Assembly: GCA_002269645.1 (NCBI GenBank)
Contig: NIVC01002150.1
Span: 1-64,000 of the forward strand
Direction: 5' to 3'
From: Macrostomum lignano
Taxonomy: Eukaryota
DNA: 64,000 nucleotides
Part shown: in pieces, positions 2,422-63,323 of the stretch
How the letters are laid out: every line of letters begins with the position of its first letter
How positions within the stretch are numbered: the first letter of the stretch is position 1
The notes under the pieces: generated by a model
What the model saw: the letters and a program-made list of their open reading frames with translations, nothing else
Told to the model about the DNA's origin: nothing
Databases searched by the model: none
Made by a program: the position numbers and the translations under genes

Positions 2422-2940
2422 TCTGCAACAGTAGCTAACTCTGCAACAGTAGCTAACTCTGCAACAGTAGCTAACTCTGCAACAGTAGCTAACTCTGCAA
2501 CAGTAGCTAACTCTGCAACAGTAGCTAACTCTGCAACAGTAGCTAACTCTGCAACAGTAGCTAACTCTGCAACAGTAGCTAACTCTGCAACAGTAGCTAA
2601 CTCTGCAACAGTAGCTAACTCTGCAACAGTAGCTAACTCTGCAACAGTAGCTTACTCTACAACAGTAGCTAACTCTGCAACAGTAGCTAACTCTGCAACA
2701 GTAGCTAACTCTGCAACAGTAGCTAACTCTGCAACAGTAGCTAACTCTGCAACAGTAGCTAACTCTGCAACAGTAGCTTACTCTACAACAGTAGCTAACT
2801 CTGCAACAGTAGCTAACTCTGCAACAGTAGCTAACTCTGCAACAGTAGCTAACTCTGCAACAGTAGCTAACTCTGCAACAGTAGCTAACTCTGCAACAGT
2901 AGCTTACTCTACAACAGTAGCTAACTCTGCAACAGTAGTA
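2422..2940. repeat. 18-bp minisatellite (TCTGCAACAGTAGCTAAC), about 29 copies, degenerate to about 3010
   Basis: Direct tandem periodicity. Confidence 0.97.
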
Positions 2941-7870: not shown

Positions 7871-9177
7871 ATGCCAGCTGAAACTGAGGAGATTCCCGAG
7901 ATCGACATGTCGCAGCAGTCGGAGGCCGTGGTTGCTGAGCAGCTGGTGTCGGCGCTCACCACAGTCGGCTTCTGCTACGCGGTCGGCCACGGCGTCCCGC
8001 AGGAGACGGTGGCGTCCGCCTTCACCGAGTCGGCCGGCTTCTTCGAGCGTCCGCTGTCCGAGAAGCTGCGGCACCGTCGTGACTGGCGCAAGTCGACCTG
8101 CGGCTACATCCCGCCTCACTGGGCCAGCACCAGCGACCCGGACGAGCCTCCCGTCGAGCGGTTCAGCCTCGACGCTCCGCCAGACGAGAAGGAGGTGCTG
8201 GACGTGTGCCACACCTGTGACGACACCGTCTGGCCCTCGGAGTCGTTCCGGAAGGCTTCGCTGGACCTCATCAGCGCGGCTCAGGTAAGTTGAGTCTGAC
8301 GCATCGGAATTGCAGCTTAAGCAGTGCACAGACCCTCAGACGTTTCTCACCTACTCTGCATCATTAAGTAGCTCAGAGCTGCTACCGACAATAACAAAAA
8401 TTTGCTGCTCAAAAGTCTGAACTTAAAACAGAGGAGCAGCGTCACAAGGCGCTCCTAAAACCGAGTGCAGGACGCCAGCGTCTGATCAGCATCCAGCCAC
8501 CCATCACCTCAGTAACTCTTATTGACGCTCCTCGCAGGACCTGACGCTGCGCCTGATGCGTCTGATCGGCGGGGGCCTCGGCCTCAGCCCTCCTGACCAG
8601 CTGGCCGACGCCTTCGTGGGATTCCCCACGCCGGCGAACACAAGCCAGCTGCGCATGCTGCACTACCCGCCGCTGTCCACCGATACCAATGGGTCCGCCA
8701 GCGGCGACCGATGCGGAGAGCACACCGACTACGGTTGCATCACGCTGGTGTTCTGCGACTCGCAGCCCGGACTGCAGGTGAGCTTCCATGCTGCTTCACT
8801 TGTTTGACGCTTTCTGTGTCTGAAACATTTGCCATTGTCCTCGTCAGGTGCTGTCCAGGACTGGTCGCTACCTTGACGCGAACCCGCGTCCTGGTCGCGT
8901 CCTGGTGAACATCGGCGACCTCATGCAGCGCTGGACTGGCGGTCGGCTGCACTCCGCCAGACACCGAGTGCTGGCACCGACTGACCCGAAGCTGCGCTCC
9001 CAGCCTCGCTACAGCCTGGTGTACTTCACGCACTGTGACGACGATTTCACTGTCCGACCGTTGCTAGGAGACCCGGACAGCTTCCCGCCGGTGAAGACCG
9101 GGGAGCACATGCGCAGGCGCTTCGAAGAGACCTTCCAGCTGGGCCAGGGCATCGACCCGCAGCTGCCGCCGCTCTGA
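7871..9177 (+). CDS. 2-oxoglutarate/Fe(II) oxygenase, paralog B (intact, 327 aa)
   Basis: Exons 7871-8284, 8538-8777 and 8848-9177, GT-AG, phase 0. HTD...H iron triad and RYS motif are intact. Confidence 0.93.
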
Positions 9178-11259: not shown

Positions 11260-13403
11260 GGCTACAAGTAGAGCATTGGCCAGAGCCTGCGACTTCCTTG
11301 ACCGGCGCATGGCCAGCTGGGTCACGCGGGCCCGCTGTCGCTCGCACATCTCCTCGTATAGTTTCTGCTCTTCCTTGCGACGGAGCCACCTGGCAGAGAA
11401 TTAACGGGTTTTGAATGAGTACAGTCCAATGGCTCTAAATGATTCAAATTTTTGTTCACAGCCAGCCGCTTGCGAGTAAGAAAATGCAAACCAGGAAATT
11501 ACCAGACAGCAAAAAGAAAATACAGTTTTGTGCTTAGTTTTCTACACCGAAATCACCCCACATTGACAACTCGTCACTGAAACCGATGCCAGCATTCTCT
11601 GCGTATTACGTATACTTGCGCTTAATTGAATTAAGAAACCAACTCTTCTACTGTTAGTAGTCGCATTGAGTATTTCTTATCGATTTTGTCCTAAATAAAA
11701 TTGAACGACGCATCCCTGAAGCTGGAGGCCGGGTAGGGTCTCCTTCAGAGATCAATTATGCATTGGATTGAGGCACATATTTGAACCCATTGGTAGGCAA
11801 GCTAAAAAACTCTGTCAGCAAGAATTAACGCGGCTCAGTGTTTCTAAGCTTCACTAAGTGAATTTTAGCTGCAACCTGTCCAACATGGGCTGGTGGATCA
11901 AAGCTGGGTCAGTACTCTCTGCTCTTGCACCTGTCACATTGGATTAAGGATTAGCAAATGCTTGTTCTGGAAAGAATTTCGAAGTGCAATAAAATAAATT
12001 CACTTACAGCTTGAAAGCCCTCCGGCACTGCCTTGAAGTGCGCGTCTCAGAGTGCTCAATCATCTCCTCGCGCTCCATCTCTTGGTATTTCTTCTCCTTC
12101 TTCTGCTGCTTCCGCTTGCTCTGCAGCCAGTCTTCGAAGCTCGGCTTGCCATTCCGCTGGCGCTCTTGCTGCTCCTGCTCTTCCTGCTGCCGCTGCCGCC
12201 GCTCCGCCTCTTGGCGCTCCTTCTCGTCTTTCTGCTGCTCACTTTTGGCGCGCAGCCAAGCATCAAAGCCGGCGCCATTGTCTTGACGCTGCGCGCGCTC
12301 ACGCGCCTCGGCCTCCTCGCGGCGCTCCCGCTCTCGCCGCTCCCGCCGCTGCTGCTGCCGCTTGGCCCGCAGCCAGGCCTGGAATGCCAGCTCGTTGTCC
12401 CGCTCCCGCTCGTCCTGGCAACCGTTGCTACGCGCGCTGCCCGGCCGGCCGTTGCCGTTGACTGACGAGCGGCCGTTTGAGTCGCGCCGTTGCTGCCGCG
12501 GCGCCGAGCTCGGCCGGCCGCGTGGACCGCCGCCACCGCCGCTCGGCTCCCCGTTGCTTTCGCTGTCGCGGCCGCTCAGCTCCAGATCTTCGTCGCTGTC
12601 GCTGTCGATTTGATCGGCTTCCACCTCTCGCCTATCGACGTACTTGTACTGGCCACCGTCGCTGACTATAAGCACCTTCCCTGAGCCCGGCTGGTCGCCG
12701 CCGCCGTCCGTCTCCACTGGTTGCTGGCGATCCGGCGTCGATTTCTCAGCGTCGTCGCTGTCGGTCTCCGGCCGCTGCTCGGGTGGCGTCTGAGGCGGCG
12801 AATCGTCTGAATCGGCCTCGTCCTCGGCCGGTAGCTGCGTCGGTGGTGACGGCGACGGGGCGACCTGGACGAGCTCGGCGCTGAATCGAACCCGTGACGG
12901 CCTGGCCGCGGATTCCTCTGGCGACGGTTCACGCTCCAGTTCGGCATTGAGCTGGTCGAGCCGGGCCAGGGTATCCTCGTAGTCGGGGCCGGGCTCTGCG
13001 AAGGGCACCGGTGGTCGATTTTGAAACGTATTTTTCAGGCCAATTAAATTCTCCAAAAACTGACTGCCCTCTACATCCAGCATGGAGTTCTTCAGCTTTA
13101 TCTTCTGGAACTTTGAAGTTGCCTTGAAGCAAATTCAAGTAAATCGTATTTCAGCTCACCTTGCAAAGCCTTTAGAAATTCATCGTCGGCTTCCTCTGGA
13201 ATTTTTATTTATTTAGGCATTAATAATCGCATCAAATCAAAGGAAATTTTGAAAGTAGGACACATAGTGGCAAAAAGAGAGCTTGACACACCAGTCCAAT
13301 CATCAGCGCTGATTGTCTGCAGCCTGTCTAACTCCTCCATTGCTGCTAGCTGATCATCTCTCAGGCCGTACTCATCATGTTGTGGCTCATCCTGCTCAGT
13401 CAT
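11221..13403 (-). CDS. CCDC181: Coiled-coil domain-containing protein 181-like (microtubule/cilia-associated), about 434 aa
   Basis: Phase-compatible exons 13403-13292, 13195-13160, 12995-12008 and 11389-11221 (1305 nt, open). Family-like motifs recognised from memory: RLDQLNAEL...RVRFSAELVQV, KVLIVSDG, repeated AFQAWLRAK/FDAWLRAK/FEDWLQSK/AFKLWLRRK, and C-terminal YKYMDYY. Confidence 0.78.
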
Positions 13404-16345: not shown

Positions 16346-17190
16346 TGTCTGTGAGATCTGCCTGAGAGATCTATCCGATATTTGTCAGAGATCTGTATCG
16401 CTGAGATCTCACAGAGATCTGTCTCTACAATCCGCATCAGAGATCTGTGCCTGTAAATGAGACCATACTCTAAGATCTACGAGTAACACCGTGCTCTGTC
16501 GCTCAGCCACCGTCTGTGACTAAATTTCCTATATAAGAATTATAGTTTAATATTGCTTGTCTCTGGGTATTAATCATTTCCGGGATGTACTTCAGACCCG
16601 ATGAGCTTCACAAACCAGATTAGATTAGCATCTACCAGCGCAAAGCTCTCCAGAGTCCAAGTCCAAACCTCAGCGATAGGAAAGCATAAGCGGCAGGAAT
16701 AGAGGATATTTATGACTCGCGCCAAGAATTCCCAACTGAGGGTGGGGGAGCAGCCGAGCTAATGGAATATCTCCTTAATTATTTTTTGAGAAAGCAAAAA
16801 TAAATTATTAGAGAGAGATAGAGAGAGGGGCGCACAATCGCTGTTAAGATAATTGATTCCGGACTCGACTGCCACTCCAAATTGTCATCGGAGACGGCAG
16901 TCGAATGAGGTTTTTTCTCTACTTGGCTCGCGAGAAAAATGAATTAATGCAATGGGGATCTTCATTATTTGGCATCGGTATTGAGTGCGTGTCGCATTTC
17001 GGCACTAGCTGACAAAGTTTTCAGACAGTTGGCCGCAAATGTTATCACCAGCATCTCGCCTGCTCTCGTCTGTTGGCCTAAACAATTAGATCAACCGCAG
17101 AATTGATAATTTGCCTGATAAAGTTCAGAGTCAGTTGGTAATTCTGCAATTTCCATATTGTGCACTTTTGTATGGCATATTTATACTTCT

Positions 17191-18281
17191 GGGATGGGTG
17201 AATGGGGCGATGGGTGATTCTGGGATGGGTGATTCTGGGATGGGTGTTGTGGGATGGGTGATTGTGGGATGGGTGATTGGGGGATAGTTGATTGGGGGAT
17301 GGGTGATTGTGGGATGGGTGATTGGGGGATAGTTGATTGGGGGATGGGTGATTGTGGGATGGGTGATTGGGGGATAGTTGATTGGGGGATGGGTGATTGT
17401 GGGATGGGTAATTGGGGATAGTTGATTGGGGGATGGGTGATTGTGGGATGGGTGATTGGGGGATAGTTGATTGGGGGATGGGTGATTGGGGATGGGTGAT
17501 TGTGGGATGGGTGATTGGGGATGGGTGATTGGGGATGGGTGATTGGGGGATGGTTGATTGGAGGATGGGTGATTGGGGATGGGTGATTGTAGATGGGTGA
17601 TTGTGGGATGGGTGATTGTGGGATGGGTGATTGTGGGATGGGTGATTGTGGGATGGGTGATTGTGGGATGGGTGATTGTGGGATGGGTGATTGTGGGATG
17701 GGTGATTGGGCCGGGGATAGTTGATTGGGGGATGGGTGATTGTGGGATGGGTGATTGGGGGATAGTTGATTGGGGGATGGGTGATTGTGGGATGGGTGAT
17801 TGGGGGATAGTTGATTGGGGGATGGGTGATTGTGGGATGGGTGATTGGGGGATAGTTGATTGGGGGATGGGTGATTGGGGATGGGTGATTGTGGGATGGG
17901 TGATTTGGGATGGGTGATTGTGGGATGGGTGATTGGGGGATGGTTGATTGGAGGATGGGTGATTGGGGATGGGTGATTGTAGATGGGTGATTGTGGGATG
18001 GGTGATTGTGGGATGGGTGATTGTGGGATGGGTGATTGTGGGATGGGTGATTGTGGGATGGGTGATTGTGGGATGGGTGATTGTGGGATGGGTGATTGGG
18101 GGATGGTTGATTGGGGGATGGGTGATTGGGGATGGGTGATTGGGGATGGGTGATTGTGGGATGGGTGATTGTGGGATGGGTGATTGGGGATGGGTGATTG
18201 TGGGATGGGTGATTGGGGATGGGTGATTGTGGGATGGGTGATTGGGGATGGGTGATTGTAGGATGGGTGATTGGGGGATGG
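17191..18281. repeat. G-rich ~15-bp satellite (GGGATGGGTGATTGT/GG), about 1.1 kb
   Basis: Direct periodicity, with two or more G3 runs per unit on the + strand. Confidence 0.97.
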
Positions 18282-18901
18282 ACGATCGAATGACTGATAT
18301 TTTTTGAAGCTTTGATGTGCGCCTTTGGTTTTCTTTATTGTTAATCTAGATGCCACTAAAAAGATCTAATTTTAATAGAATATATTAATTGCTAGGAAAT
18401 TATCAAGATCATCACGTGACGAACCGCGCCTCCTATGATCAGGATCAGGATCGCAGGTGAATTGGGCATCTATGGCAGACGCTATTCTCACTCATGTTTC
18501 AGATCTAACCAAAGCAGAACTTCCATCAGCATAACCAACTCAAACACCCAAGCTGTGAGATCAGCTCACAGCTCATTTGCTCATCAGTTCTTTTCGTTGC
18601 CAGCACTTCTCAATCGAGGAGCAGCCAATCAGACGACTTGAGCTCTGCGATTCTGGGATTTGGGATTGGCTGGCAGTCCCGATGAAGACCTGAGCTCACA
18701 GCACAGCGAAAATCTCTTATTCAAATTGAAAGAGTACGGCTGTTCAGTCGCTAGTCCCGATTTTGACCAGCCAACGCTTTCCAGTCGCCCGAAACTCTTC
18801 TTCAGTGAGTGCATCGAAGCTTTTCATTTCAGCTGCACAGGTGCGAGTGCTGAATACTTGTTGGAGTGTATGCCTGTTTGTACAGGACTGTTGGCTGCTG
18901 A

Positions 18902-19195: not shown

Positions 19196-20996
19196 ATGCT
19201 CCGCAGACTGGAGACCACCGGCCTCATGCTTGCTGTCTGCTGCCTGTCGCTGCTCCTGGCTTCGAGCGGGCGCGTCGCCCTGGGCGAGGTGAGAAACACA
19301 ATGACTTTCTGCGATCTGGGACTGCTGTAATGAGCTCTATTCGCATTCGCAGTCTGAATACATTCGCGCATCAATTGTGCATTCGCTCTCCTTTGCAGGG
19401 GCGTAGCCAGGGGGCAAGGGCTGAGGGCGCGGTCCCTCCCCAATATGGCTGGCAAAGGTATATGGCGCCCCCTAGCAACAGCTTTGGCTTTGGGGGGGGG
19501 GGCTTTGGGAAGGGGCAGAGCAACTCAGCGGTAAAACGCGTCTGACTCTCGCGTCACAGACCTCTGGTTCGATTCCGTGTGCGGCTACTTTCATTTGAGG
19601 CTTGTGTGGCCCAGGGAGTTGTCGCACGATTCAAACCCACACGGCCAACTTCAAAAGCACAGAGACTGTACATGCCTGACGATTAGAAAGTCAGGGCCGC
19701 TGTACACCCTGTGTGAGCGTGTATGAGTGCGTGCCTGCGTACAGTATTGGCGCGCTTGTATGATTGTGGGACGATGTCGCCGAAGACGTTGCGCCAGGGT
19801 AGCTGTGCCTACAGAGGTGCAGAATCCCCTTGACTGCGTTCCTCCTCTTTCGTGCTTGAACGGGACAATGAGAGCGGAGCAAAGTGATTGTGTGGGAATG
19901 TCATCAGCGTTCCGTATCTGCTTTCTCTCTTAGTAGTGTTCATTAGGAATATTACCGTCCTTAGCTATCATTGGGCTGCAACAGGTCTAAGAATATTCTT
20001 TTTCGACTCATTCAGACCGCCGAATTCGACAACGACGGCGATGCGCTGACCGAGTACCAGTTGATGCCAGATCGCGACGAATTGCTGTCGGACGAGTTCA
20101 AAGACTACGACGACTGGTCGAAGAGGAACTTGGGGTCTGCTCTGCGCTTGCGCGGAAAGAGACACATGGGATCACCTTTCCGCTGGAGGGGTAAGAAGAA
20201 CATGGGATCTGCCATGCGATTCCGCGGCAAGAAGAACATGGGATCTGCCATGCGATTCCGCGGCAAGAAGAACATGGGATCTGCCATGCGATTCCGCGGC
20301 AAGAAGAACATGGGATCTGCCATGCGATTCCGCGGCAAGAAGAACATGGGATCTGCCATGCGATTCCGCGGCAAGAAGAACATGGGATCTGCCATGCGAT
20401 TCCACGGCAAGAAGAACATGGGATCTGCCATGCGATTCCGCGGCAAGAAGAACATGGGATCTGCCATGCGATTCCGCGGCAAGAAGAACATGGGATCTGC
20501 CATGCGATTCCGCGGCAAGAAGAACATGGGATCTGCCATGCGATTCCGCGGCAAGAAGAACATGGGATCTGCCATGCGATTCCGCGGCAAGAAGAACATG
20601 GGATCTGCCATGCGATTCCACGGCAAGAAGAACATGGGATCTGCCATGCGATTCCGCGGCAAGAAGAACATGGGATCTGCCATGCGATTCCGCGGCAAGA
20701 AGAACATGGGATCTGCCATGCGATTCCGCGGCAAGAAGAACATGGGATCTGCCATGCGATTCCGCGGCAAGAAGAACATGGGATCTGCCATGCGATTCCG
20801 CGGCAAGAAGAACATGGGATCTGCCATGCGATTCCGCGGCAAGAAGAACATGGGATCTGCCATGCGATTCCACGGCAAGAAGAACATGGGATCTGCCATG
20901 CGATTCCGCGGCAAGAAGAACATGGGATCCGCCATGCGATTCCGCGGCAAGAAGAACATGGGATCCGCCATGCGGTTTTATGGCAAATATTATTAG
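19196..20996 (+). CDS. Neuropeptide precursor (357 aa): signal peptide, acidic spacer and 24 predicted amidated nonapeptides
   Basis: Exon 1 (19196-19288) encodes the signal-peptide-like MLRRLETTGLMLAVCCLSLLLASSGRVALGE and ends at a GTGAGA donor. Exon 2 (20016-20996) follows a TTCAG acceptor in phase 0. It has an acidic pro-region, then KR/KK-flanked peptides each ending in Gly: NLGSALRLRG, HMGSPFRWRG, NMGSAMRFRG x18, NMGSAMRFHG x3, NMGSAMRFYG x1. Confidence 0.93.
19396..19460 (+). mobile_element. Probable truncated left end of a GC-rich MITE (CAGGGGCGTAGCCAGG...)
   Basis: Resembles the CAG-starting GC-rich termini of the two complete MITEs in this window; no matching right end or TSD found. 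Confidence 0.35.
19518..19590 (+). mobile_element. tRNA-like SINE head remnant in the neuropeptide intron
   Basis: A-box-like CTCAGCGGTAAA and B-box GGTTCGATTCC at tRNA-like spacing; no complete cloverleaf. Confidence 0.35.
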
Positions 20997-21192
20997 ACAA
21001 ATTTGATGTAACGATCGTACATTTGAAAAACTATTTGAGAACCAGGAAAATATAATTTAGCTGCCGCGAATACTCCGCTGCCGTCGATCGCTGCAGATCA
21101 GAGATATGAATTGTTTAAAAAATTCAAGCTTAAGATGCCCTGAAACTCGATGTCGTATTGTCGTACTTGACGTATTTGTAGAAACAGATATT

Positions 21193-28044: not shown

Positions 28045-31000
28045 TGTCACTGTATCTGACTGAAAGACTGAAAAAATTAGGCGCAGAGTTAGCTACATGG
28101 CGCATGACCAAGATGGCCACACACCAAGATGGCCACAGCTCTAAGTGTCTAAATAGATAATAATAATCCCATAATAATAACATGGCAGGTCTATATATTT
28201 CACTTATTTCCTATTGGTAGGCCCTAATAATTAGAGAAATAGATGCTAAAAAGATGCTATATTGGAATTGTATTATATTAGGCCCCTATATGGTTTCCAG
28301 GCACCGAAAAGTGTGGATACCCCCTATATTATAGTCATTCCTTTGGCTTTAGCTTGACCTATATATGCATATATTTATTCATTACACTAAGCAAGTAGCC
28401 TAACACAAAATAAATACCTTGCCTTGTTGTATATTCATCTTAATTTGTGTATAGCATTACTAGTAGCAATGGTTTCTTAATAAACAGATACTATATAATG
28501 ATAGATTTGATAAATGTAATGATAGGGAATAAATTGGCATAAACACTGAAAAAGATTAAAGTTTTTGTATTATAGGTAATTAGTTTCAAATCTATTAGGT
28601 CTATTTCATCAGTATTTATGAATATGATTGATTAAACATAACTGCCATAACAAATAATATAAAAATAGCTATTATGTTGCTAATTAAGGATAAAAAGAGA
28701 GCAGAGCCAAAGAGATTCAATGTTGTGGCCATCTTGGTGTGTGTCCAGTCCATCTTGGTCTTATATTGTTTAGGTCATTTGGTGACAGGTATTTTATTTA
28801 AAAATACTTAAATAGTTGTTTCAATGATTTTGATAGACACACTTTGCCTTTGGTAAAAAATGAAAGATTTAGTGAGAGGTCATTTAGTGACATGATACAC
28901 CTCATAACATCAATTTGTAGTTATTTTGGTAAGAGACAAATAGGGGCCTACAATATAAAAAATGGTAGCTCTATAATAAAAAATAAAAAAAGAAAGTAAA
29001 ACAATGCTTTACTATTTCAGCAAGGCTGAAATTTTATCAATTAAGATTAGCAAGATAGTTTTCTACTTGCAACTATGATTATGATAGGCCTAGCTATTAC
29101 CATATTCATAAAGTGAAGGTCTATAGACTATATGTATAACTTTCTTGGCCATATTGTTTACTCTTTACCAATGTTAAACTGGTTACTAGGCCTAATATTG
29201 AAATGTATAGGCCTATATCTAATGTCACATTCTGGATTATGTAGTATATGCCCAAAAATCTAGGCTTGCATTGGCCTTGTATATCTAACATTAGATATGC
29301 ACAGTTGGTATGCATGACTCCTAAGATAATAGTGTGCATATACACTTGGCTTTATTTTGTCTTTGTTAATTTAAAAAAAGAGATTCATAGTAAACTTCTT
29401 TGTCTGTGGCAATTTACTTGAATTAGGTGATTTATAATATAGAAAAAAAATTATTCTTACAAAAATGTGCTTTAGTTAGATGGATTTATTTAAATAATTT
29501 TTGTTACTTCTTATTAGGTGCCCCAAAAGAAAGGCTCTAGATTGCTAGTTTGCACTAAATATAAAAATTTTGCCATTATAATTATTTATTAAGTGTTGTT
29601 TTACTATTATTTATATAAAATGTTCTATTTTTTAAAAGTGCAATCAAAAAAGCAACATAATAGGGCAAAGTCTAAAAATGTAAGAAAAAATAATAAACCA
29701 AATCTGCTTCCAAATAAGATGCTTACTGTATTTATTAAGCAACAAAAAACAATGAAATTAGGCTTAAATATATATCATTGTGGCGTATATGCACAAGAAA
29801 AAGAATTTTCTAAATTGCATTAGTAGAAGCTAGGTAAAATGCAATTTTCTGATCCTTATGGGAATTTGTATGTTTAAATAGTAAACTATGTTGAATATAG
29901 TATTTTTTGCAACTGAACTCTACAAAATACATATTCTCAATGGTATTGAAAGTGATAAATAGATAGACCCTTAAAAAGAATGTTAAATATGTTGTTGCAT
30001 TATAGAATGTAATATAAGATACTTAAAGTTAATAAATACATTACAGCCTTTCTATCATTTTTATTAGTCATTTTAGTCATAATTTAATTTACCATTTTTA
30101 CAAATCATCAAAAATAAGGCTATATGTGAATAATTTGTGCTTTTATAGATGTTTCTAACTTTTTAAAACTCAACTAAAATTACTTTATAACTTTATTGCT
30201 TTAAAATCGCCAAAAAACAAATTTTTAAAAAACTTGCCCTTTGTTTTTAGATTTTGTTTGCTACAGATGAAATGCTCATTTAGCTATTTTGGAAATAAAC
30301 TAGTAACAGTTAAATTGGTAATCAACAAATTGACTAGATACATATAGGTAGTATAATAGAAATAAATACCTTTGTATCTATCAATCTATGTGTTGCTTGA
30401 AGGTTTAAAATATTAATATAAATAATATAGTCAATGCTTATAAGGTTTATTTGGTGGGTTATCCTACTTATGAAAAAAACATTTATTTGGTACCAATATA
30501 TTTATCTTTGCTTACAATTAGAATGTTAGTTTTAGCTAGATTAGTAAAATATTCATATCACAGTATATATAGATGATACCAAAAGGAATTTTACTTTAAG
30601 TACAAAATATATAATAGAATATTGCTTTGATAATAGCATAGCATCATACAATCATTTCTAGCATTGTGCCTGTTTCTATATATTTTTAATTTTAACCTTT
30701 TATTATTTGTCATTGATATTATCTAATATCAAATTCCGATTTGACCTTGGGTCATAGGGTAATAGCTTTGAGCTGTTATAAAATTATAGGATAAGAATTG
30801 TGGCTCCTTAAAGTCTCTGCCCTGTAACAGCTATGCATAGCCTTGGATATGTTACAAAATTGGTCTTAATCAAACCTTGCTATCTTGCAATAGGTCAGGC
30901 TTATTTATAGATATAACAATGTAAGCTGAAATGTGTTTTAAATGCCAATTTTTAGTTTGTCTCTAGAGCCCTAGGTTTCTTGTGTTATAGTTGGCTCATG

Positions 31001-31350
31001 AAATGACATTGACCTCTCCTTTAGTCTACATTTTCTGTTATATTGTGTGCCTATACATGTCAATTTTAATGTTGGTATCCTCAATGTGAATCCCAGATGC
31101 CAAATTGGCACCCAGGTTTTCCAAGCTGGAAGTTCATGATTATTGGAGTTATAATTATTGAGACTTTAGGACTTTTCTATCGATTTTCAAATTTGATTAA
31201 TTTGTAGGCATACAAACTTTTACAACTTCTATGCCTCAGAGAGGTTCAACAATGTAAAGGGTTCCAATTTGAACCCAAAGATGCCAAATAGCAGTGTGAT
31301 TCTGCTTAAAATTTCAAACAAAACGATTCCAGCAACACCAAACAGCCCGG

Positions 31351-34300
31351 ATGTCTGCAGAATCAGCACCCGTGGAGCAGCCGGCCCCGTCAGAGGCGCC
31401 AGCCGAGGGGTCCAGTCGCAAACGAGCAAACGATGACCTGCTGACCCGAACTGGCGGGGCCTACATACCGCCAGCTAAACTGCGCGCAATGCAGGCCTCA
31501 ATGTCCGACAAGTCTAGCGAGCAATACCAGCGGGTGGCCTGGGAGGCGCTTAAGAAAACTCTTAATAGCCTAATTAACATGACTAATGTGACCAATCTGC
31601 CTAATATTGTTCGCCAATTACTATCGGAGAATCTGGTCAGAGGCCGGGGCTTGTTCATCCGGTCTCTGATGACCAATCAGGCCACCTCACCTGTGTTCAC
31701 GCCCGTCTTTGCCGGCCTAGTGGCCGTTGTCAATACTAGATTTCCGCAGATTGGCGAACTAGCCTTGAAACGCCTCATACAGGAGTTGAAAAAGGCTTTT
31801 CGGCGAAACAATAAAGAGACTTGTTTGAATTCTTGCACTTTTCTGGCTCACCTCATCAACCAGCGAGTTGCTCACGAGGTTCTGGCTCTGGAAATTCTCG
31901 CCTTGCTGCTCAACAGGCCGACGGACGGCTCCGTTGAGATTGCAGTCGGCTTCCTTAAGGAGGTCGGCGCCAGACTGTTGGAGACTGCACCAAGAGGACT
32001 GCGCATGATCTTCGATCAGCTGCGGGGCATCTTGCACGAGGCCGCGTTGGATAAGCGAGTCCAGTACATGATTGAGACTCTGTTTCAGGTGAGGCTCGCT
32101 GTGCATCAGTGCTACCTTGTGTTTTAGTACCTGTGATGGGTGATATTTAGTACCGGTTCTAGTACCTGTCCCGGTGTCTTTATATTATAGGGGCGGGGTT
32201 CCGGTGTTACCTGTTTTTACTACTGATACTATGGTATTTTTCTTTCATTCGATGCGACCATGCAACTCATATTTTAGTACGCTCGTACCGGTGCTATTTA
32301 TCTTCTAGTATCGGCTCTCTTTGTCTCAGCAATGGTGCCTTGAGCCTTTTAGTAAAGTCGTGTCTTTTTGCACCGGTGTTGTCTGTCTTACCGGTTCTGA
32401 GTGTCTTCAGTCCCGATGCCACCTGTTTTTGATGTAGGTAGCTGATTACACAGAATATCACCCAGAACGCTCATTCGCACTCTCTGTATGACAGTCGCAG
32501 GGCAAAAAAGATACGCACTGAGCCTACTCTTGGGGTGAAGAAAGCAAGTAGTACAAACCATATAGACAATCTAAAGTAGCCATCTAAACAAAATGTGCAA
32601 TTGTAGTATGAGACAAGTGTATGCAAAAATGAACAAGTTTGCATCGTATATATCATTTAAGCTATCATTATAATTCTGCCCTATTGTTATTACTATTGTA
32701 ATGATATGTCAGTAGTGATTTCAGCATCAACTGTTTTTTAATTTCTAATCTCGCAGGTCCGCCAGGACGAGTTCAAGCAGTACCCATCAATCCAGGAGGC
32801 CCTAGACCTAGTGGAAGAGGAGGACCAGGTGACTCACCTGCTCAGCCTGGAGGATGAGCACGACACTGAGCAGGCGCTGAATGTATTCCGCTACGATCCG
32901 GACTATCTCACCCACGAGGACGAATACAAGGCTATCCAACGGGAGCTGCTCGGCGACGGAGACGACAGTAGCAGCGACAGCGACAGCGGCAGCAGCGACG
33001 GCAGCGAAAGCGAAGACGACAACGAAGCTGGCGAAGGCGCAGATACGGAGGCTGCGGCGGCGGCTAAGCCGGCCATCGACCAAACCCAAGCCCAGCTAGT
33101 GCAGCTGCGCAAGACCATCTACCTGACTGTGCAGAGCAGCCTAGACTACGAGGAGGCGGCCCACAAGCTCCGGCGGATCCAGCTGCGGCCTGGCGAGGAT
33201 GCCGAACTGGCCAGCATGATTCTGGACTGCTGCGCCCAGCTGCGCACCTACGAGAAATTCTACGGATTGATGGCGCAGAGATTCTGCCAATTAGACAGAG
33301 CCTACGTGCAGCACTATGAGAGAATCTTCACTGAGCAGTATAATACTATTCACAGGCTGGAGACGATGAAGCTGCGCAATGTGGCCAGATTCTTTGCTCA
33401 CCTGTTGCACACTGACTCAATCTCGTGGGGCGTCATGCAGTGCGTGCAGCTCACTGAGCAGGGCACAACGTCTTCTAGTAGGATATTTCTGAAGATCCTG
33501 TTCCAAGACCTGGCCGAGCACATGGGCTTGGAGAGGCTCTCCCAGCGCTTCGCCGACTGCACTCTGCAGGCATTCTTCGAGGGCCTGTTCCCGCGGGATC
33601 ATCCGCGCAATACCCGCTTCTCGATTAACTACTTCAAGAGCATCGGCCTCAACGGAGTCACCCTGCCGCTGCGCCAGTGGTACGAGACTGCACCAAAGCC
33701 CAAGGCTGAGGAGTCTGATTCCTCGGAGTCTTCCTCTTCTAGTAGCAGTTCGTCTTCGTCATCGTCCTCTGATTCTGACTCAGACTCGGATGATGAGGCG
33801 TCAGCTAGACGGAAGCGGAGTAGCGGACGGGCCAGCCGATCAATCAAGCAGGAGCCTAAAGAGGCTGCGGCACCTACTGATGAAGGCAGGCAGCGGCATG
33901 GGTAAGCTGTTAACTAAATATCCCCACACTCACACAGAATGTGCAGCGGCCCGGACTTGTCCCTAATTCTGGTGTAAATCTTATGGAAATATCCTTAACT
34001 TAGATTCAACTTTCGTTTTAGTTTTATCATTAGTACACTATTTAAAGTGCACTATTATAGGGGTTTTAGCCTAGTGGTTAGAGCGTCGGACTCATTACAA
34101 AGGTCGGGGTTCGATTCCCGATCCCAATCGAAACTATTTGTGTCCTTGAGCAAGACACTTAAATCTGCATTGCTTCAGTTCACTCAGCTGTAAAATGGGT
34201 GCCAGCATTAGCTGGGGTAATTGAGGGTGTGTGTGGCGACCCCCCAGTCCTTGGACTGAACAGCCGTACGCAGCCTTCAGATGCGCCGCGCAATAGCTGC

Positions 34301-34795
34301 GGCTGAGCTGTCGGTTGCACATCTGGCCATAAAGGAAGGTGTAATCAATTATTATTATTAGATACTCGTACTATTAAAGCTTGATGTGCTATTCTCGCTA
34401 CTCGCCAGTAGGTTATACAAGCAGCAGTAACCCACCTGTACTTTTTTCTAATCCCACACAGCCGACAGTCGGACGCGGCTGTTGATAAGCAGTCGGAGAG
34501 GCGGCGAGGCAGCGGTCGCGATCGAGACCGCGACTATGAACGTGACGACGGCGATGAATCTCGTCGGCCAAGTCGCGACAGTCGAGATAGTCGGCGAGCC
34601 TCGGACAGGCGCGACAACAACGATCAGCATCGTCGGGATGTCGGAGACCACAGCCACGATCGATCCCATCGCGACTCAGTCGAGCGTCGGCGACCTGTCG
34701 ACGATAATAGGAACGGCGATAATCGCCGAGGGACGCAGATCCGTAGCGAAGTTCGCCTTGTCGGCGATCGAAGCGAACGAGGAAGTCGCCGATAG
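31351..34795 (+). CDS. CWC22: Pre-mRNA splicing factor CWC22 (MIF4G + MA3 domains, RS/RD-rich tail), about 738 aa
   Basis: Exons 31351-32088, 32757-33901 and 34462-34795 (2217 nt, open). Hallmarks: [74 protein letters not shown]. Confidence 0.96.
34060..34360 (+). mobile_element. Full-length tRNA-derived CORE-type SINE in CWC22 intron 2
   Basis: A box TAGCCTAGTGGTTAGAGC, B box GGTTCGATTCC, MIR/CORE-like GTGTCCTTGAGCAAGACACTTAA...CAGCTGTAAAATGGG, and a (TTA)n tail; second copy at 5776-6096. Confidence 0.88.
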
Positions 34796-34811
34796 GCTGA
34801 TTTCATTTTTT

Positions 34812-34817
34812 AATAAA
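34812..34817 (+). terminator. Probable polyadenylation signal of CWC22
   Basis: AATAAA 17 nt after the stop codon. Confidence 0.55.
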
Positions 34818-35022
34818 AAGAACTGCCTACTATGTTTAGCACCGCTTCATAACTGGTAATGTGCTTGTAAATTAAATTCATATTCATGTTGTTATAAATT
34901 TGCCCGGCTAAATACACGTGGCTTCAATTGTGCCGCCTTTGCACCAACTTCGTTGCGTTTCCAATTATTGAATGTTTTCTATGTATATTCATGATTTTTT
35001 ACGAGCGTATTATAAAGCGGGA

Positions 35023-35623
35023 CTGTTAGCTTGTTCCTATGCTGTAGGGTCAGCTGTTAGCTTGTTGCTATTCAGTAGGGTCAGCTGTTAGCTTGTTCCT
35101 ATGCTGTAGGGTCAGCTGTTAGCTTGTTCCTATGCTGTAGGGTCAGCTGTTAGCTTGTTCCTATGCTGTAGGGTCAGCTGTTAGCTTGTTGCTATTCAGT
35201 AGGGTCAGCTGTTAGCTTGTTCCTATGCTGTAGGGTCAGCTGTTAGCTTGTTCCTATGCTGTAGGGTCAGCTGTTAGCTTGTTCCTATGCTGTAGGGTCA
35301 GCTGTTAGCTTGTTGCTATTCAGTAGGGTCAGCTGTTAGCTTGTTGCTATTCAGTAGGGTCAGCTGTTAGCTTGTTGCTATTCAGTAGGGTCAGCTGTTA
35401 GCTTGTTGCTATTCAGTAGGGCTAGCTGTTAGCTTGTTGCTATTCAGTAGGGTCAGCTGTTAGCTTGTTGCTATTCAGTAGGGTCAGCTGTTAGCTTGTC
35501 GCTATTCAGTAGGGTCAGCTGTTAGCTTGTTGCTATTCAGTAGGGTCAGCTGTTAGCTTGTTGCTATTCAGTAGGGTCAGCTGTTAGCTTGTTGCTATTC
35601 AGTAGGTCAGCTGTTAGCTTGTC
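35023..35623. repeat. 31-bp minisatellite (CTGTTAGCTTGTTGCTATTCAGTAGGGTCAG), about 19 copies, between CWC22 and PSMG2
   Basis: Direct periodicity; ends 15 nt before the PSMG2 acceptor. Confidence 0.97.
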
Positions 35624-35638
35624 GCCGCCCGCCCGCAG

Positions 35639-36355
35639 CTGGTGCTGTCAGACAAGTCCATCGGGCCGGGCAAATGGTCCGACTACACCTGCGTGCTGCC
35701 CAGCGTGTCAGTCGGCAACGTTGGCCAGCTGGCTGCCGACCTGATCATCAGCTCCGGCCGGCTGTACTCGGTGGGCTACTGGCACAGCGCCTCGCTGACC
35801 CCGGTGTGCGGCCCCGGCCCGTTCGGCGGGCCGCCCTGCACAGCCGCCGAACTGTGGGAGAGCGAGCAGCGCCGCATCGTTGTGCTGCAGCTGCGCTCCC
35901 CCGTGCTGGCCTGTCGAAGGCGGCGCTTCCTTGACGAGGCCTGCAACCTCATCGCCGAGTGCGGCTTCGCCCGCGTGCTGCTGCTGGCCAGCGCATGGGA
36001 CTCGTCTAGGCGGGAGCCCAGCTGCCCGTCGCTTGGCTTGGCCGGCTCGCCCGGTTGGCCGAATCCCGCACCAGAAGGTCTCGAGTTCGAGCCGCTAGAG
36101 CCGGAGCGTCGCCTCTCCGGCGTCGGCCTGGCCGGGCCGCTGTTCCGCCGGCTGGCCGCCGACTCGCGCCCGACTGGCACGGCTTTGGCCTGCCTGTTCT
36201 GCTCCGAGGGCGACAATTCCGGACACGCCGGACAGTTGGCCGAAGCTGCGGCCGCCATTCTCGGACAGCCGGGCCTGGCGCCGGTACCTGGACGGCCTCT
36301 GCCGTCGTCCTGGCGTCTGCTGTACGGCAGCCGGCCAGTCGAAGGCTTGTATTGA
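35639..36355 (+). CDS. PSMG2: Proteasome assembly chaperone 2 (PAC2); the genomic ORF lacks any ATG
   Basis: PAC2 signature VLPSVSVGNVGQLAADLII, plus LQLRSP, LFCSEGDN and PSSWRLLYG. The ORF opens after in-frame TAG 35615-35617, starts at acceptor CCCGCAG|CTG (35638/35639, phase 0) and has no Met codon. Confidence 0.9.
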   Translation: MVLSDKSIGPGKWSDYTCVLPSVSVGNVGQLAADLIISSGRLYSVGYWHSASLTPVCGPGPFGGPPCTAAELWESEQRRIVVLQLRSPVLACRRRRFLDEACNLIAECGFARVLLLASAWDSSRREPSCPSLGLAGSPGWPNPAPEGLEFEPLEPERRLSGVGLAGPLFRRLAADSRPTGTALACLFCSEGDNSGHAGQLAEAAAAILGQPGLAPVPGRPLPSSWRLLYGSRPVEGLY

Positions 36356-36451
36356 CAACTTTAAACTGTAGAGTCTGCCAGCTTATTAGCTGTAATTCTG
36401 GGGTATCGATTTTAATGTGTTGGTGTTCTTCATATTTTTTACGTTTACAAG

Positions 36452-36592
36452 CCAAGCTGGTAGGTAGCCAAGCTGGTAGGTAGCCAAGCTGGTAGGTAGC
36501 CAAGCTGGTAGGTAGCCAAGCTGGTAGGTAGGTAGCCAAGCTGGTAGGTAGCCAAGCTGGTAGGAAAGTAGCCAGGCTGGTAGGTAGCCAAA
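36452..36592. repeat. 16-bp minisatellite (CCAAGCTGGTAGGTAG)
   Basis: Direct. Confidence 0.93.
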
Positions 36593-37193
36593 CACCCTAA
36601 CAGCATACTGGCACTAGACGCTCAGCATTTTTTCGAATTTTCGCGCCTGTAAAACATCTACCGCTCTAAGTAGCTAGAGTGTCAGTTGATTTTGTGCGCA
36701 TGTGTGAAAAAGTTTAAAAAAGTTTGTTTATATTTGTGTTTTTTCCGAGTTTTCTAAATCTCGAATAAAAGACAAGCCTGCAACTGTTGCAGTTTTTCTT
36801 CTAATCGCTTATGCCGGTTAGTTTTATGATTAAATTAATTTAATTAAATTTGATCGAAAACAAATTTTTTGCCGTTTATTTTTGTATTAACCGACTGTAC
36901 ATTATTATATACATTATACACGGACAAGTTACACGCATGTACATGCAGCGTAAATTTTGGGCGACATTTTTACTGACCGGTGGCGGCTTGCGAATTGCAA
37001 CTGCCCCCTGTTGCTATGGCGCTCCGCTCCCGTTTCCCGCTGTTGCCAACAGGGCCGGCGTCTGAGTCACGGAGGCCAGCAGTTGTTGGTGCTGTAGGGT
37101 CTTCTGCCTTCGCTCCATCTCTGCAATTTTAATGCGCCCATCGAGCTTTGGCCAAGTTAACTTGGTAAATAACACTGAGTGCTTGTACAAAGG

Positions 37194-37470
37194 TTTGCCA
37201 GCGGAGGGGTTGCTGCTAGTCCTGAGGGTTGCCAGCGGAGGGGTTGCTGCTAGTCCTGAGGGTTGCCAGCTAGGGGTTGCTGCTAGTCCTGAGGGTTGCC
37301 AGCAAGGGGTTGCTGCTAGTCCTGAGGGTTGCCAGCTAGGGGTTGCTGCTAGTCCTGAGGGTTGCCAGCTAGGGGTTGCTGCTAGCCCTGAGGGTTGCCA
37401 GCGGAGGGGTTGCTGATAGTCCTGAGGGTTGCCAGCTAGGGGTTGCTGTTAACCCTGAGGGTTGCCAGCT
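37194..37470. repeat. 33-bp minisatellite (GAGGGTTGCCAGCTAGGGGTTGCTGCTAGTCCT)
   Basis: Direct. Confidence 0.93.
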
Positions 37471-37907
37471 TGGTGCTGCTGGCCTGGTGATTCAAACTGT
37501 AGGTTGCTAGTTCAGTAATTTCTGCCTTGAGATAGGAAATATGGAAGTACATGTGTGTTCTTATTCACGGGGAACTTTTGCATTAACTTTCTGGAGCCAT
37601 GAATGAGCACACGCGCTTGTCTGTGCGGCCTGATCTCATGGTAACTCTAATGCAAACTATTGTACGAGCTAGATTAGCTCTTGTTTGGTAATTCGGGCGA
37701 ACTGCGGTAGAGGAGATTTATTGCACCTGTCATGCTCAAAAGCATGCACTCAGCACTCTATCAAGCTAAAAAACTCAACTTGGCCCAAAAGGTTGGTCTG
37801 TTTACCAGAACTTATTAGGAAAAGTGCATGGCTATTGGGGCTCTGCAAAGGCTGCTCGAATTGTCTCCATGGATACTGGGATATCGTGTGATTTTCGAAA
37901 AAATCAA

Positions 37908-55678
<17,771 letters not shown>

Positions 55679-58015: not shown

Positions 58016-59134
58016 ATATATGTTTCACTGAAAATAAAGGATAGTTACTACTGACTCTTCCTTCGAGTTGTGCAGTTATTCTGCAGGCAATATTCGCAAA
58101 AAGACTGCGGGTGGCGACCTTCGGCGACCGGTTGTCCCACAATCAGCAGAGAGACGAATATTCCTTTCGCTCACGGGGAATCGCTGAACTGCTGTGGCTC
58201 ATGGGAGGAGGTTGCTGAGATGCCAAGGGTCAATTGGGAGTTGTTGATAGGCCAAGCAAGCATCAAAGGGAGAGTTAGGGTTAAGCCAAAGCGCAAAGTG
58301 TGTACTACTATCTTAGGCTATAGAAAGCAGGCTTCGATGGTGGATGCTTTTTTTGCCTTAAGCATCATTTTCCTTAAGAAACCAACAATAGTGACTGTAA
58401 AATGTCCGAATACATAACATGCAGTTTATTCAAAATTTATTTCTTTGCTGCCTCCCCAACGGGGGGCGCAGATTGCTAGTCCACTATACTAAAAATAGTT
58501 TGTCGGTATCTATCTATGTGAGCGTAAACGATTTCAGAGAATAATGGCTCAGCCGATTTTTATGAGATTTGCACCATTTAGATAAAAAATTATACCTATT
58601 TTTCTGATTCTTGAGCACACACAAGCACACCAATGCTGTACGCAGGCACGCACTCATACACAGCTCACACAGGGTGAACAGCGGCCCTGACTATCTAATC
58701 GTCAGGCATGTACACTCTGTGTCTTAAGGTTCGGCTCTCATGGGACTGTGAATTGCACGGCAACCCCCTCGGCCGATTTTCGTGGACACAAGCCCCCCCC
58801 CTGGGATCGTGCAGGCGCGAGAGTCAGACCAATGGCACTGTTTTGAGGGCACTATTGAAGACCCTTGAAACTACTTTTTATGGTTTTATTTTATAAAAAT
58901 CTGCTTATTATGCCACTGATAGTAGACATCTATGCAGCTGAATAAACTCCTTAGTGAACGTTTGTATTTATGATTAAATAAACTTCTCTATAGCTAGATC
59001 TGCTATCAAAACTAAATGCCAAATTCTGAATATCTTAAGCTTGCAGTGGGCAGAAAAGTCAATAACTAATAATTCCTATACATGGCCTTCTGAAATTCAG
59101 ATTTCCGTTTCGACTGAAAGACTGAAAGCTTAAA

Positions 59135-63323
<4,189 letters not shown>

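What the first reader, a model, noticed from the sequence alone, without database searches (positions are those of the whole stretch)
34795..36355. CWC22-PSMG2 operon-like pair: PSMG2 has no ATG and may take its start codon from a spliced leader
Seen in the sequence: the whole 238-codon PAC2 ORF has no Met codon and is closed upstream by an in-frame TAG (35615). It begins exactly at a phase-0 acceptor (CCCGCAG|CTG GTG CTG), about 840 bp downstream of the CWC22 stop on the same strand. Adding one Met gives an N-terminus (M-LVLSDKSIGPGKWSDYTCVLPSVSVGN) about as long as that of typical PSMG2. Established knowledge: flatworm spliced leaders end in AUG, which can act as the initiator codon, and SL trans-splicing resolves polycistronic pre-mRNAs. 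Inference: this is a dicistronic unit in which an essential proteasome chaperone depends on trans-splicing for its start codon.
Basis: partly seen in the sequence, partly recalled or inferred. Interest (0 to 1): 0.72.

Follow-up and report, generated by a model that had tools for sequence, protein, structure and literature searches.

The report
Flatworm PSMG2 gene lacking own ATG
In the flatworm Macrostomum lignano the gene for proteasome assembly chaperone 2 has no start codon of its own and almost certainly gets its AUG from the spliced leader added by trans-splicing, a mechanism already documented in flatworms.

Summary
Window 35639-36355 (+) is an intact, intronless 238-codon PAC2/PSMG2 reading frame with no ATG. 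An in-frame TAG at 35615 closes it upstream, and it starts directly after a CCCGCAG| acceptor, 843 nt downstream of the CWC22 stop.

The window is the first 64 kb of Macrostomum lignano contig NIVC01002150.1. The single 35-nt spliced leader (SL) of this species ends in ATG. Joined at 35638|35639, it gives AUG-CUG-GUG in frame (MLVLSDK...).

Indirect support:
- Three homeologous copies keep the acceptor and the ATG-less frame, with 7 synonymous and 3 non-synonymous differences.
- GenBank annotates the gene as a 5'-partial CDS starting within 3 nt of the acceptor.
- With one added Met, the N-terminus aligns without gaps to the closest homologue.
- The spacer contains no consensus donor.

I could reach no RNA reads, so the junction itself is inferred.

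The operon part is plausible but unproven. After subtracting a 31-bp minisatellite (19.4, 7.4 and 4.4 units in the three copies), the spacer is 243 nt. That meets the published M. lignano operon criterion. An own promoter in the spacer is not excluded.

SL-AUG initiation was shown in Schistosoma in 2006 and is acknowledged for Macrostomum. This is a new member of a known kind, of modest interest.

The parts
31327..31332 (+). TTCCAG acceptor in front of the first CWC22 coding exon; probable SL trans-splice site of CWC22
   Evidence: It matches the published trans-splice acceptor motif [T/C]TNCAG. The GenBank CDS starts at 31333 in L003 and L001, and 3 nt later in L002. The SL ATG would be in frame, adding M-QHQTAR before the genomic ATG at 31351.
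31333..34795 (+). CWC22 gene (MIF4G + MA3). Coding exons 31333-32088, 32757-33901 and 34462-34795; 744 codons as annotated
   Evidence: Pfam MIF4G 3.2e-17 and MA3 1.6e-24. The exon model reconstructed reproduces the annotated length and range. Homologues are CWC22 at 52-58% identity.
34812..34817 (+). AATAAA poly(A) signal of CWC22, 17 nt after its stop
   Evidence: Use of this signal is inferred, not shown.
34796..35022 (+). Unique, AT-rich part of the spacer (CWC22 3'UTR plus about 190 nt). It contains TATAAA at 34893 and 35011
   Evidence: Only 0-1 differences in 227 nt among the three copies. No GT[AG]AG donor.
35023..35622 (+). 31-bp minisatellite, 19.4 units, consensus CTGTTAGCTTGTTGCTATTCAGTAGGGTCAG. 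It makes up most of the outron or intercistronic region
   Evidence: TRF score 1025, 96% matches. There are 7.4 and 4.4 units in the other two copies. It occurs nowhere else in the window. It carries TAG in every frame, so no upstream frame can read through.
35623..35638 (+). C-rich tract and 3' splice acceptor CGCCGCCCGCCCGCAG|; inferred SL trans-splice site at 35638|35639
   Evidence: Identical in all three copies. The annotated 5'-partial CDS begins 3 nt downstream.
35639..36355 (+). PSMG2 / PAC2 coding exon: 238 codons plus TGA, no ATG, single exon
   Evidence: Intact in the three copies with 7 synonymous and 3 non-synonymous differences.
36450..36591 (+). 16-bp minisatellite inside the presumed PSMG2 3'UTR
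36764..36769 (+). First AATAAA after the PSMG2 stop (3'UTR about 410-430 nt if used)
   Evidence: Use of this signal is inferred.

Best explanation
The PSMG2 pre-mRNA of M. lignano is SL trans-spliced at the acceptor 35638|35639. The 35-nt spliced leader ends in AUG. The mature mRNA therefore reads 5'-...UUGCAUG|CUG GUG CUG UCA..., and the leader's own AUG, 32 nt from the cap, is the initiator. It gives a 239-residue protein, MLVLSDKSIGPGKW..., of which only the Met is not encoded at the locus.

The genomic exon has no in-frame AUG, and its only two AUGs are out of frame. Unprocessed or polycistronic RNA therefore cannot yield PSMG2.

The precursor is probably, at about even odds, a CWC22-PSMG2 dicistronic transcript. 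In that case CWC22 is cleaved and polyadenylated after AATAAA at 34812, and the 800-nt remainder, mostly a copy-number-variable minisatellite, is discarded as the intercistronic outron.

Shown here: the sequence anatomy, its conservation in three copies, the family assignments and the completeness of the N-terminus. Taken from the literature: the SL sequence, trans-splicing and operon statistics, and the ability of a flatworm SL AUG to initiate. Inferred: that this acceptor receives the SL, and that the SL AUG is the codon used.
For: 1. Organism and SL. The window is identical to M. lignano NIVC01002150.1. The M. lignano SL ends in ATG (PMC8629364), as do the SLs of M. cliftonense and M. hystrix, where the authors themselves call the terminal ATG a translation start codon (PMC10468722).

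2. The frame and acceptor geometry are exact.

3. Three homeologous loci (L001-L003) keep the acceptor, the upstream TAG and the ATG-less open frame.
- The differences are 7 synonymous and 3 non-synonymous, with P=0.006 against neutrality.
- One of them is CTG->TTG in the very first codon, which is synonymous for Leu.

4. No other PAC2-family protein of M. lignano turned up in either protein search, of 5.8 billion sequences and of 1.8 billion representatives. These copies are therefore the only PSMG2 found for the species.

5. GenBank annotates the copies named in the collection as 'partial' proteins starting VLSDK, 3 nt after the AG.
- That annotation cut transcripts at mapped SL-read peaks and called ORFs with TransDecoder. 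From my knowledge of TransDecoder, it calls a Met-less ORF only when the frame is open to the transcript's 5' end.
- The same +0/+3 jitter is seen at the CWC22 acceptor between copies.

6. N-terminus. With one Met added, the conserved LPxVSVGN motif starts at residue 21, exactly as in the closest homologue P0137, and the alignment from Met onwards is gapless. The median over 96 homologues is 20.

7. The spacer has no GT[AG]AG donor. An acceptor not preceded by a cis donor is the known requirement for SL trans-splicing.

8. Conserved genes are strongly enriched among SL trans-spliced genes in this species: 45% of conserved genes are trans-spliced.

9. SL-AUG initiation is established in flatworms. 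In S. mansoni more than 40 cDNAs need the SL AUG (Cheng et al. 2006, as cited in PMC9851317).

10. Operon part. The two genes are on the same strand and adjacent, with no other called gene within at least 1.7 kb upstream or 6 kb downstream. The repeat-adjusted spacer is 243 nt in all three copies, against a published threshold of 1 kb and a mode of about 100 bp.
Against: - No SL-containing read, cDNA, CAGE or proteomic datum for this gene could be reached. Supplement searches found nothing.
- The acceptor CCGCAG deviates from the [T/C]TNCAG motif at position -5 (C instead of T).
- The annotated CDS starts at 35642, not 35639, so the annotated transcript end is 1-3 nt off the predicted junction.
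- The first three codons (CTG GTG CTG) are all near-cognate starts, so non-AUG initiation cannot be excluded from N-terminal length alone.
- For the operon: the raw distance is 843 nt, well above the roughly 100-nt mode. TATAAA motifs lie at 34893 and 35011. The unique spacer is as conserved as exons, which could equally mean a promoter. The three copies are duplicates, so their shared synteny is not independent evidence.
Confidence: 0.78

Rival explanations
1. Same start-codon mechanism (SL AUG), but PSMG2 is monocistronic. A promoter in the 227-nt unique spacer drives a transcript whose 5' outron is the minisatellite, and trans-splicing removes that outron. This rival contests only the operon sub-claim, which I put at about even odds; it does not compete with the SL-AUG core that my 0.78 refers to.
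For: About 60% of SL trans-spliced genes in M. lignano are not in operons. TATAAA lies at 34893 and 35011, the latter 12 nt before the array. The unique spacer shows 0-1 differences in 227 nt among copies, fewer than introns at 1.3-1.6%. CWC22 has its own AATAAA right after the stop.
Against: The pair meets the published operon criterion, with a repeat-adjusted distance of 243 nt. Low divergence of a 227-nt piece rests on one substitution against about four expected, which is not significant. TATAAA in AT-rich sequence is common by chance. No promoter tool for this organism was available.
Confidence: 0.4
2. Conventional, non-trans-spliced mRNA translated from a near-cognate codon (CUG 35639, GUG 35642 or CUG 35645).
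For: The first three codons are CTG GTG CTG. Starting at any of them would give an N-terminal length within the range of homologues. GenBank's protein starts at the GTG.
Against: - The first codon is TTG in copy L001.
- Any transcript extending upstream carries many out-of-frame ATGs in the spacer and array (13 ATGs).
- The frame begins exactly at an AG acceptor.
- The species puts an AUG-ending SL on about 30-39% of its genes.
Confidence: 0.05
3. A cis-spliced upstream exon supplies the ATG. It could be ATG 34972/34981 with an in-array donor, or the phase-0 CWC22 donor at 32088 joining in frame to 35639 to give a CWC22(1-252)-PSMG2 fusion.
For: Phase-compatible combinations exist. Flatworm acceptors are often shared between cis- and trans-splicing (PMC12582326).
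Against: - The only spacer donors are GTAGGG, GTTAGC and GTCAGC. None is GT[AG]AG, and each recurs in the repeat units.
- They would add 21-36 residues to an N-terminus that is already complete.
- GenBank models keep the two genes separate in all three copies.
Confidence: 0.05
4. The ATG-less intronless frame is a decaying retrocopy or pseudogene.
For: It is a single exon and has no start codon.
Against: - The frame is intact for 238 codons in three copies, with a 7:3 synonymous to non-synonymous ratio (P=0.006 against neutrality).
- All family motifs are conserved.
- No other PSMG2 of this species was found in either protein search.
- There is no SL remnant or poly(A) tract at the flanks.
Confidence: 0.02

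Closest known systems
SL-AUG-initiated mRNAs of Schistosoma mansoni (Cheng, Cohen, Ndegwa & Davis, J Biol Chem 2006; cited in PMC9851317 and PMC12582326)
   Same: The flatworm SL ends in AUG. The acceptor lies at a codon boundary, so the SL AUG is in frame. The recipient exon lacks its own initiator. Such cases are reported for more than 40 cDNAs.
   Different: The species and clade differ: a free-living macrostomorph rather than a parasite. The gene differs (PSMG2). Use of the SL AUG is inferred here from genome and annotation, not shown by cDNA or a reporter assay.
M. lignano operons as defined by Ustyantsev & Berezikov 2021 (PMC8629364)
   Same: Two adjacent same-strand conserved genes. The downstream gene starts at a trans-splice-type acceptor. 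The intergenic region is inflated by repeats, and the repeat-adjusted distance is 243 nt (<1 kb).
   Different: That definition is operational, based on distance. I could not see the SL-read, T-fill or transcriptional-unit tracks for this pair, so membership is not demonstrated.
slORFs (Song et al. 2023, slORFfinder; PMC9851317)
   Same: A reading frame that exists only after the SL is joined to the recipient mRNA.
   Different: slORFs in that work were called from Ribo-seq in nematodes, trypanosomes and Oikopleura, mostly from near-cognate NUG codons. Here the SL supplies a true AUG, and no ribosome data exist.
C. elegans SL2 operons
   Same: A polycistronic precursor resolved by 3' end formation of the upstream gene plus trans-splicing of the downstream one.
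   Different: M. lignano has a single SL with no SL1/SL2 specialisation. The nematode SLs contribute no AUG. The spacer here is about 800 nt rather than about 100 nt.

Membership tests
Flatworm SL-AUG-dependent coding sequence | The organism's spliced leader ends in AUG | tested here: met
   The window is M. lignano. The published SL is ...TTATTGCATG, and the genus relatives have the same ending. No SL RNA gene lies in the window itself.
Flatworm SL-AUG-dependent coding sequence | [quoted passage not shown] | tested here: met
   CCCGCAG| at 35638. There is no GT[AG]AG anywhere in the 843-nt spacer. The acceptor is identical in three copies.
Flatworm SL-AUG-dependent coding sequence | The SL AUG is in frame and no genomic in-frame AUG is available | tested here: met
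   The junction is at a codon boundary. There are 0 ATG in 238 codons, and an upstream in-frame TAG at 35615.
Flatworm SL-AUG-dependent coding sequence | SL-joined transcripts observed at the site | not testable with these tools
   Only indirect evidence: the GenBank 5'-partial CDS begins 3 nt from the AG, in an annotation that cut transcripts at SL-read peaks.
Flatworm SL-AUG-dependent coding sequence | Translation actually starts at the SL AUG | not testable with these tools
   N-terminal length and a gapless alignment with P0137 fit, but no Ribo-seq or proteomics is available.
M. lignano operon (PMC8629364 criterion) | Adjacent genes on the same strand with no intervening opposite-strand gene | tested here: met
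   Only CWC22 and PSMG2 are called in 12.7 kb, both on the + strand.
M. lignano operon (PMC8629364 criterion) | Repeat-adjusted intergenic distance below 1 kb | tested here: met
   843 - 600 = 243 nt, and the same 243 nt in the other two copies.
M. lignano operon (PMC8629364 criterion) | The downstream gene is SL trans-spliced | tested here: inconclusive
   Inferred from the anatomy and the annotation. No reads were seen.
M. lignano operon (PMC8629364 criterion) | A common precursor RNA from one promoter | not testable with these tools
   Needs long reads, RT-PCR or cap mapping.
PSMG2 / PAC2 (PF09754) | Profile match above the curated threshold and full-length similarity to PSMG2 orthologues | tested here: met
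   40.3 bits against 25.8. 31-40% identity over 91-97% of the length to animal PSMG2. The invariant PxVSVGNVGQL, SEGDN and PxSW motifs are present.
CWC22 | MIF4G followed by an MA3 domain; orthologues named CWC22 | tested here: met

The most novel reading that the evidence does not exclude
The 31-bp minisatellite that fills the outron is not neutral filler. Each unit carries two CAG decoy acceptors. SL joining at TTCAG|TAG would give AUG-UAG, and joining at GTCAG|CTGTTAG gives a frame that closes after 23 codons. On this reading, copy number (19.4, 7.4 and 4.4 units in the three homeologues) would titrate productive trans-splicing. Because the exon has no AUG of its own, it would thereby set PSMG2 dosage per copy. 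Obligate SL-dependent initiation would then be a tunable expression switch rather than an accident of acceptor phase.
Probability: 0.07. Interest if true: 0.5.

Novelty: new member of a known kind. Interest (0 to 1): 0.25.

Why it matters
1. Annotation. The GenBank entries for this gene (PAA61264.1 and PAA56080.1, both labelled 'partial') are very probably complete apart from one Met encoded by the spliced leader. The same is likely true of many '5' partial' models in M. lignano and other flatworm genomes. In this window CWC22 also has the SL ATG in frame. An annotation rule that prepends the SL ATG at mapped trans-splice sites would repair them.

2. Biology. This is a clean example, in a transgenesis-capable model flatworm, of a conserved housekeeping gene whose translation depends strictly on trans-splicing. 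It could serve as a natural reporter for SL trans-splicing efficiency.

3. The mechanism itself does not change, because it has been known since 2006.

Tried and rejected
- I searched the window for the SL RNA gene (35-mer, up to 3 mismatches) and found none.
- I looked for gene-level RNA evidence and found nothing. I searched the full text for the gene id and the supplements of Grudniewska 2018 and 2016 for Mlig003375, Mlig018665, PSMG2 and CWC22.
- I tried to recover the GenBank names of the CWC22 copies, to see whether they share a transcriptional-unit prefix with PSMG2.
  - My reconstructed 744-aa protein is not in the collection by exact sequence.
  - A homology search listed only foreign CWC22.
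- I hoped the closest PSMG2 relatives would be flatworm transcripts carrying an SL.
  - P0014 (L004) and P0137 (L005) are genomic-looking contigs of unnamed organisms.
  - Each has its own genomic ATG.
- I tested whether the unique spacer is unusually conserved, as a promoter would be. One substitution against about four expected is not significant.
- I first read the 3-nt gap between the acceptor and the annotated CDS start as a possible different splice site. I rejected this because there is no other AG nearby, and the CWC22 acceptor shows the same +0/+3 variation between copies.
- Rfam and ARAGORN found no bona fide RNA gene in the window.
- The bacterial promoter and terminator scanner was not used, because it does not apply to this eukaryote.
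Full report
**What is there**

The region was read directly and translated.
- From 35639 to 36352 there are 238 sense codons followed by TGA (36353-36355), and none is ATG.
- The next in-frame stop upstream is TAG at 35615-35617, only 7 codons before the frame's first coding codon.
- The frame begins immediately after ...TGTCGCCGCCCGCCCGCAG| (35638|35639).
- The upstream gene's stop codon ends at 34795, so the spacer is 843 nt.
- Pfam assigns the frame to PAC2 (PF09754, E=4e-10, 40.3 bits against a 25.8 cut-off). It assigns the upstream exons to MIF4G and MA3, the CWC22 architecture.

It has 19.4 units at 96% identity, and it ends 16 nt before the acceptor.

**Whose genome it is**

A protein search returned a 100%-identical 237-aa entry, 'hypothetical protein BOX15_Mlig003375g1, partial [Macrostomum lignano]'.
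- Its 90% cluster has three members, on three contigs of assembly GCA_002269645.1.
- Locus L003 is base-for-base identical to window 29642-42355, with the same coordinates in the record. The window is therefore the first 64 kb of NIVC01002150.1.
[quoted passage not shown] The three loci are homeologous or duplicated copies, with 1.3-2% divergence in non-coding DNA.

**The spliced leader**

The literature held in the library gives one 35-nt SL for this species, CGGTCTCTTACTGCGAAGACTCAATTTATTGCATG. It is present on 30-39% of genes (PMC8629364; PMC5730564).
- It ends in ATG. The SLs of M. cliftonense and M. hystrix end the same way, and those authors explicitly label the terminal ATG as a translation start codon (PMC10468722).
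- Joining it at 35639 gives ...GCAUG|CUG GUG CUG UCA GAC AAG, that is M-L-V-L-S-D-K, in frame.

**Is the frame a living gene?**

All three copies keep the acceptor, the upstream TAG and an open, Met-less 238-codon frame.
- Ten codons differ among them, 7 synonymously and 3 not. With 72% of possible changes being non-synonymous, three or fewer of ten has P=0.006. This indicates purifying selection.
- One synonymous change is CTG->TTG in the very first codon after the AG. That fits a Leu codon better than a required CUG initiator.
- Neither the 5.8-billion-protein search nor the 1.84-billion-representative HMMER search found another M. lignano PAC2 protein. Only one cluster scores below 1e-30.
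- A pseudogene or retrocopy reading is therefore very unlikely.

**Is anything missing besides the Met?**

The frame aligns over 91-97% of its length with animal PSMG2. All invariant motifs are present: PxVSVGNVGQL, SEGDN and PxSW.
- The conserved LPxVSVGN block starts at residue 20 of the genomic frame, so at residue 21 with one Met added.
- Among 96 homologues in which the motif could be located, the median start is 20 and the interquartile range is 19-23. 99% of them begin with M.
- The closest homologue outside the species (P0137, 39% identity) reads MFISLDPSLSGDKWEEYTLLIPCVSVGN. It aligns without a gap to M+LVLSDKSIGPGKWSDYTCVLPSVSVGN, with the motif at residue 21 in both.
- The only thing the locus fails to encode is the initiator.

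**Could an upstream cis exon supply it?**

I enumerated every ATG in the spacer that runs open to a GT at a codon boundary.
- Only ATG 34972 and ATG 34981 qualify. Their donors are GTAGGG, GTTAGC or GTCAGC.
- None matches the species' GT[AG]AG consensus. All three lie in the first minisatellite units, and the same motifs recur in later units.
- There is no GT[AG]AG anywhere in the spacer.
- Such exons would add 21-36 residues to an N-terminus that is already of normal length.
- The array has TAG in all three frames, because the period is 31 (1 modulo 3). Nothing initiated upstream can read through it.
- An acceptor not preceded by a cis donor is exactly what directs SL trans-splicing (Conrad et al. 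1993, as summarised).

**What the public annotation implies**

The GenBank models derive from a pipeline that mapped SL-containing reads, cut transcriptional units at the SL peaks, and called ORFs with TransDecoder. From my knowledge of that program, it reports a Met-less ORF only if the frame is open to the transcript's 5' end.
- All three PSMG2 models are 5'-partial and start at GTG 35642, 3 nt after the AG. The annotated transcript end therefore lies within 3 nt of the acceptor.
- The 3-nt offset is annotation jitter. At the CWC22 acceptor (TTCCAG|CAA CAC...) the CDS starts directly at the AG in two copies and 3 nt later in the third.
- This is indirect but specific evidence that SL reads were mapped here.
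- I could not see the reads themselves. Searches of supplements for the gene ids or names found nothing.

**CWC22 as a second case**

The annotated CWC22 CDS starts at 31333, right after TTCCAG, which matches the published trans-splice motif [T/C]TNCAG.
- My exon model (31333-32088, 32757-33901, 34462-34795) reproduces the annotated 744 codons.
- The SL ATG would be in frame here too. It would add MQHQTAR ahead of the genomic ATG at 31351.
- Both genes of the pair thus look trans-spliced. Only PSMG2 depends on the SL for a start codon.

**Operon or not**

The published analysis of M. lignano found that repeats inflate intercistronic distances. After subtracting them, the distances peak near 100 bp. 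The authors call a pair an operon if the adjusted distance is below 1 kb and the downstream gene is trans-spliced. By that rule 15% of genes, and 40% of trans-spliced genes, are in operons.

Points in favour of an operon:
- The raw spacer is 843, 471 and 379 nt in the three copies. The differences are entirely array copy number (19.4, 7.4 and 4.4 units), and the adjusted distance is 243 nt in all three.
- CWC22 has AATAAA 17 nt after its stop.
- No other gene is called within the 12.7-kb loci.
- The pair therefore meets the operational definition.

Points against, or left open:
- That definition is a distance heuristic.
- The unique 227 nt contain two TATAAA motifs.
- The unique 227 nt are at least as conserved as exons, at 0-0.44%.
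- Most trans-spliced genes in this species are monocistronic.

I rate co-transcription at about even odds.

**Chance**

The absence of internal Met is not by itself significant. P is about 0.09 given 70% GC and 84% GC3, although homologues have 2-8 internal Met. The significance lies in the conjunction of features and its conservation.

**Comparison with what is known**

- The terminal AUG of flatworm SLs acts as an initiator. This was shown by Cheng et al. 2006. [quoted passage not shown]
- A dedicated tool for such frames exists (slORFfinder).
- Macrostomum genome papers already treat the SL ATG as a start codon when annotating.
- The M. lignano trans-splicing paper does not analyse SL-AUG use or mention this gene.

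The finding is therefore a new, clean member of a known class. It is not a new mechanism.

**Verdict**

- Observation: confirmed.
- Start codon from the SL: well supported indirectly, about 0.8.
- Dicistronic unit: plausible, about 0.5.
- Novelty: new member of a known kind.
- Interest: modest. The main value is in annotation and as a possible natural reporter of trans-splicing in a transgenic model.

Noticed in passing
window 31327-31351: CWC22 itself appears SL trans-spliced at TTCCAG|31333. The SL ATG is in frame and would add MQHQTAR ahead of the genomic ATG at 31351, so two alternative N-termini are possible. The GenBank CDS starts at the AG in two copies and 3 nt later in the third.
   Followed up: partly
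window 34060-34126 (+), inside the last CWC22 intron (33902-34461): A degenerate tRNA-like element with A- and B-box-like motifs. Rfam tRNA scores 19.6 bits, below the 29-bit threshold, and ARAGORN finds nothing. It is probably the head of a tRNA-derived SINE. There is a single copy in the window.
   Followed up: partly
window 35023-35622, with the matching arrays in L001 and L002: Each 31-bp unit holds two CAG decoy acceptors. SL joining at TTCAG|TAG would give AUG-UAG. Joining at GTCAG|CTGTTAG gives a frame that closes after 23 codons. Unit number differs 4.4, 7.4 and 19.4 among the three homeologous copies.
   Followed up: partly
window 32088 and 35639: The first CWC22 donor (TTTCAG|GTGAGG, phase 0) could in principle cis-splice in frame to the PSMG2 acceptor, giving a MIF4G-PAC2 fusion. 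There is no evidence that this happens.
   Followed up: no
window 2300-3000, 17081-18365, 20000-21050, 42000-44000, 46000-48800, 52300-54000, 59100-61500: Very long tandem or low-complexity arrays, open in several frames on both strands, with extreme strand skews (GC skew 0.51 at 16-18 kb; AT skew -0.74 at 52-54 kb). At a rough estimate they occupy about a fifth of the window.
   Followed up: no
window 4661-5233 and 7709-8290 (+): Two similar ORF pieces with the N-terminal domain of 2-oxoglutarate/Fe(II) dioxygenases (DIOX_N, E about 1e-18 each). They look like a tandem gene duplicate.
   Followed up: no
window 12007-13134 (-): A 376-codon open frame with a weak CCDC34-like match (E=1e-6, below the Pfam threshold).
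   Followed up: no
window 36450-36591 and 37191-37481: Two more minisatellites (16-bp and 33-bp units), in and just beyond the presumed PSMG2 3'UTR. Both vary in length among the three copies.
   Followed up: no
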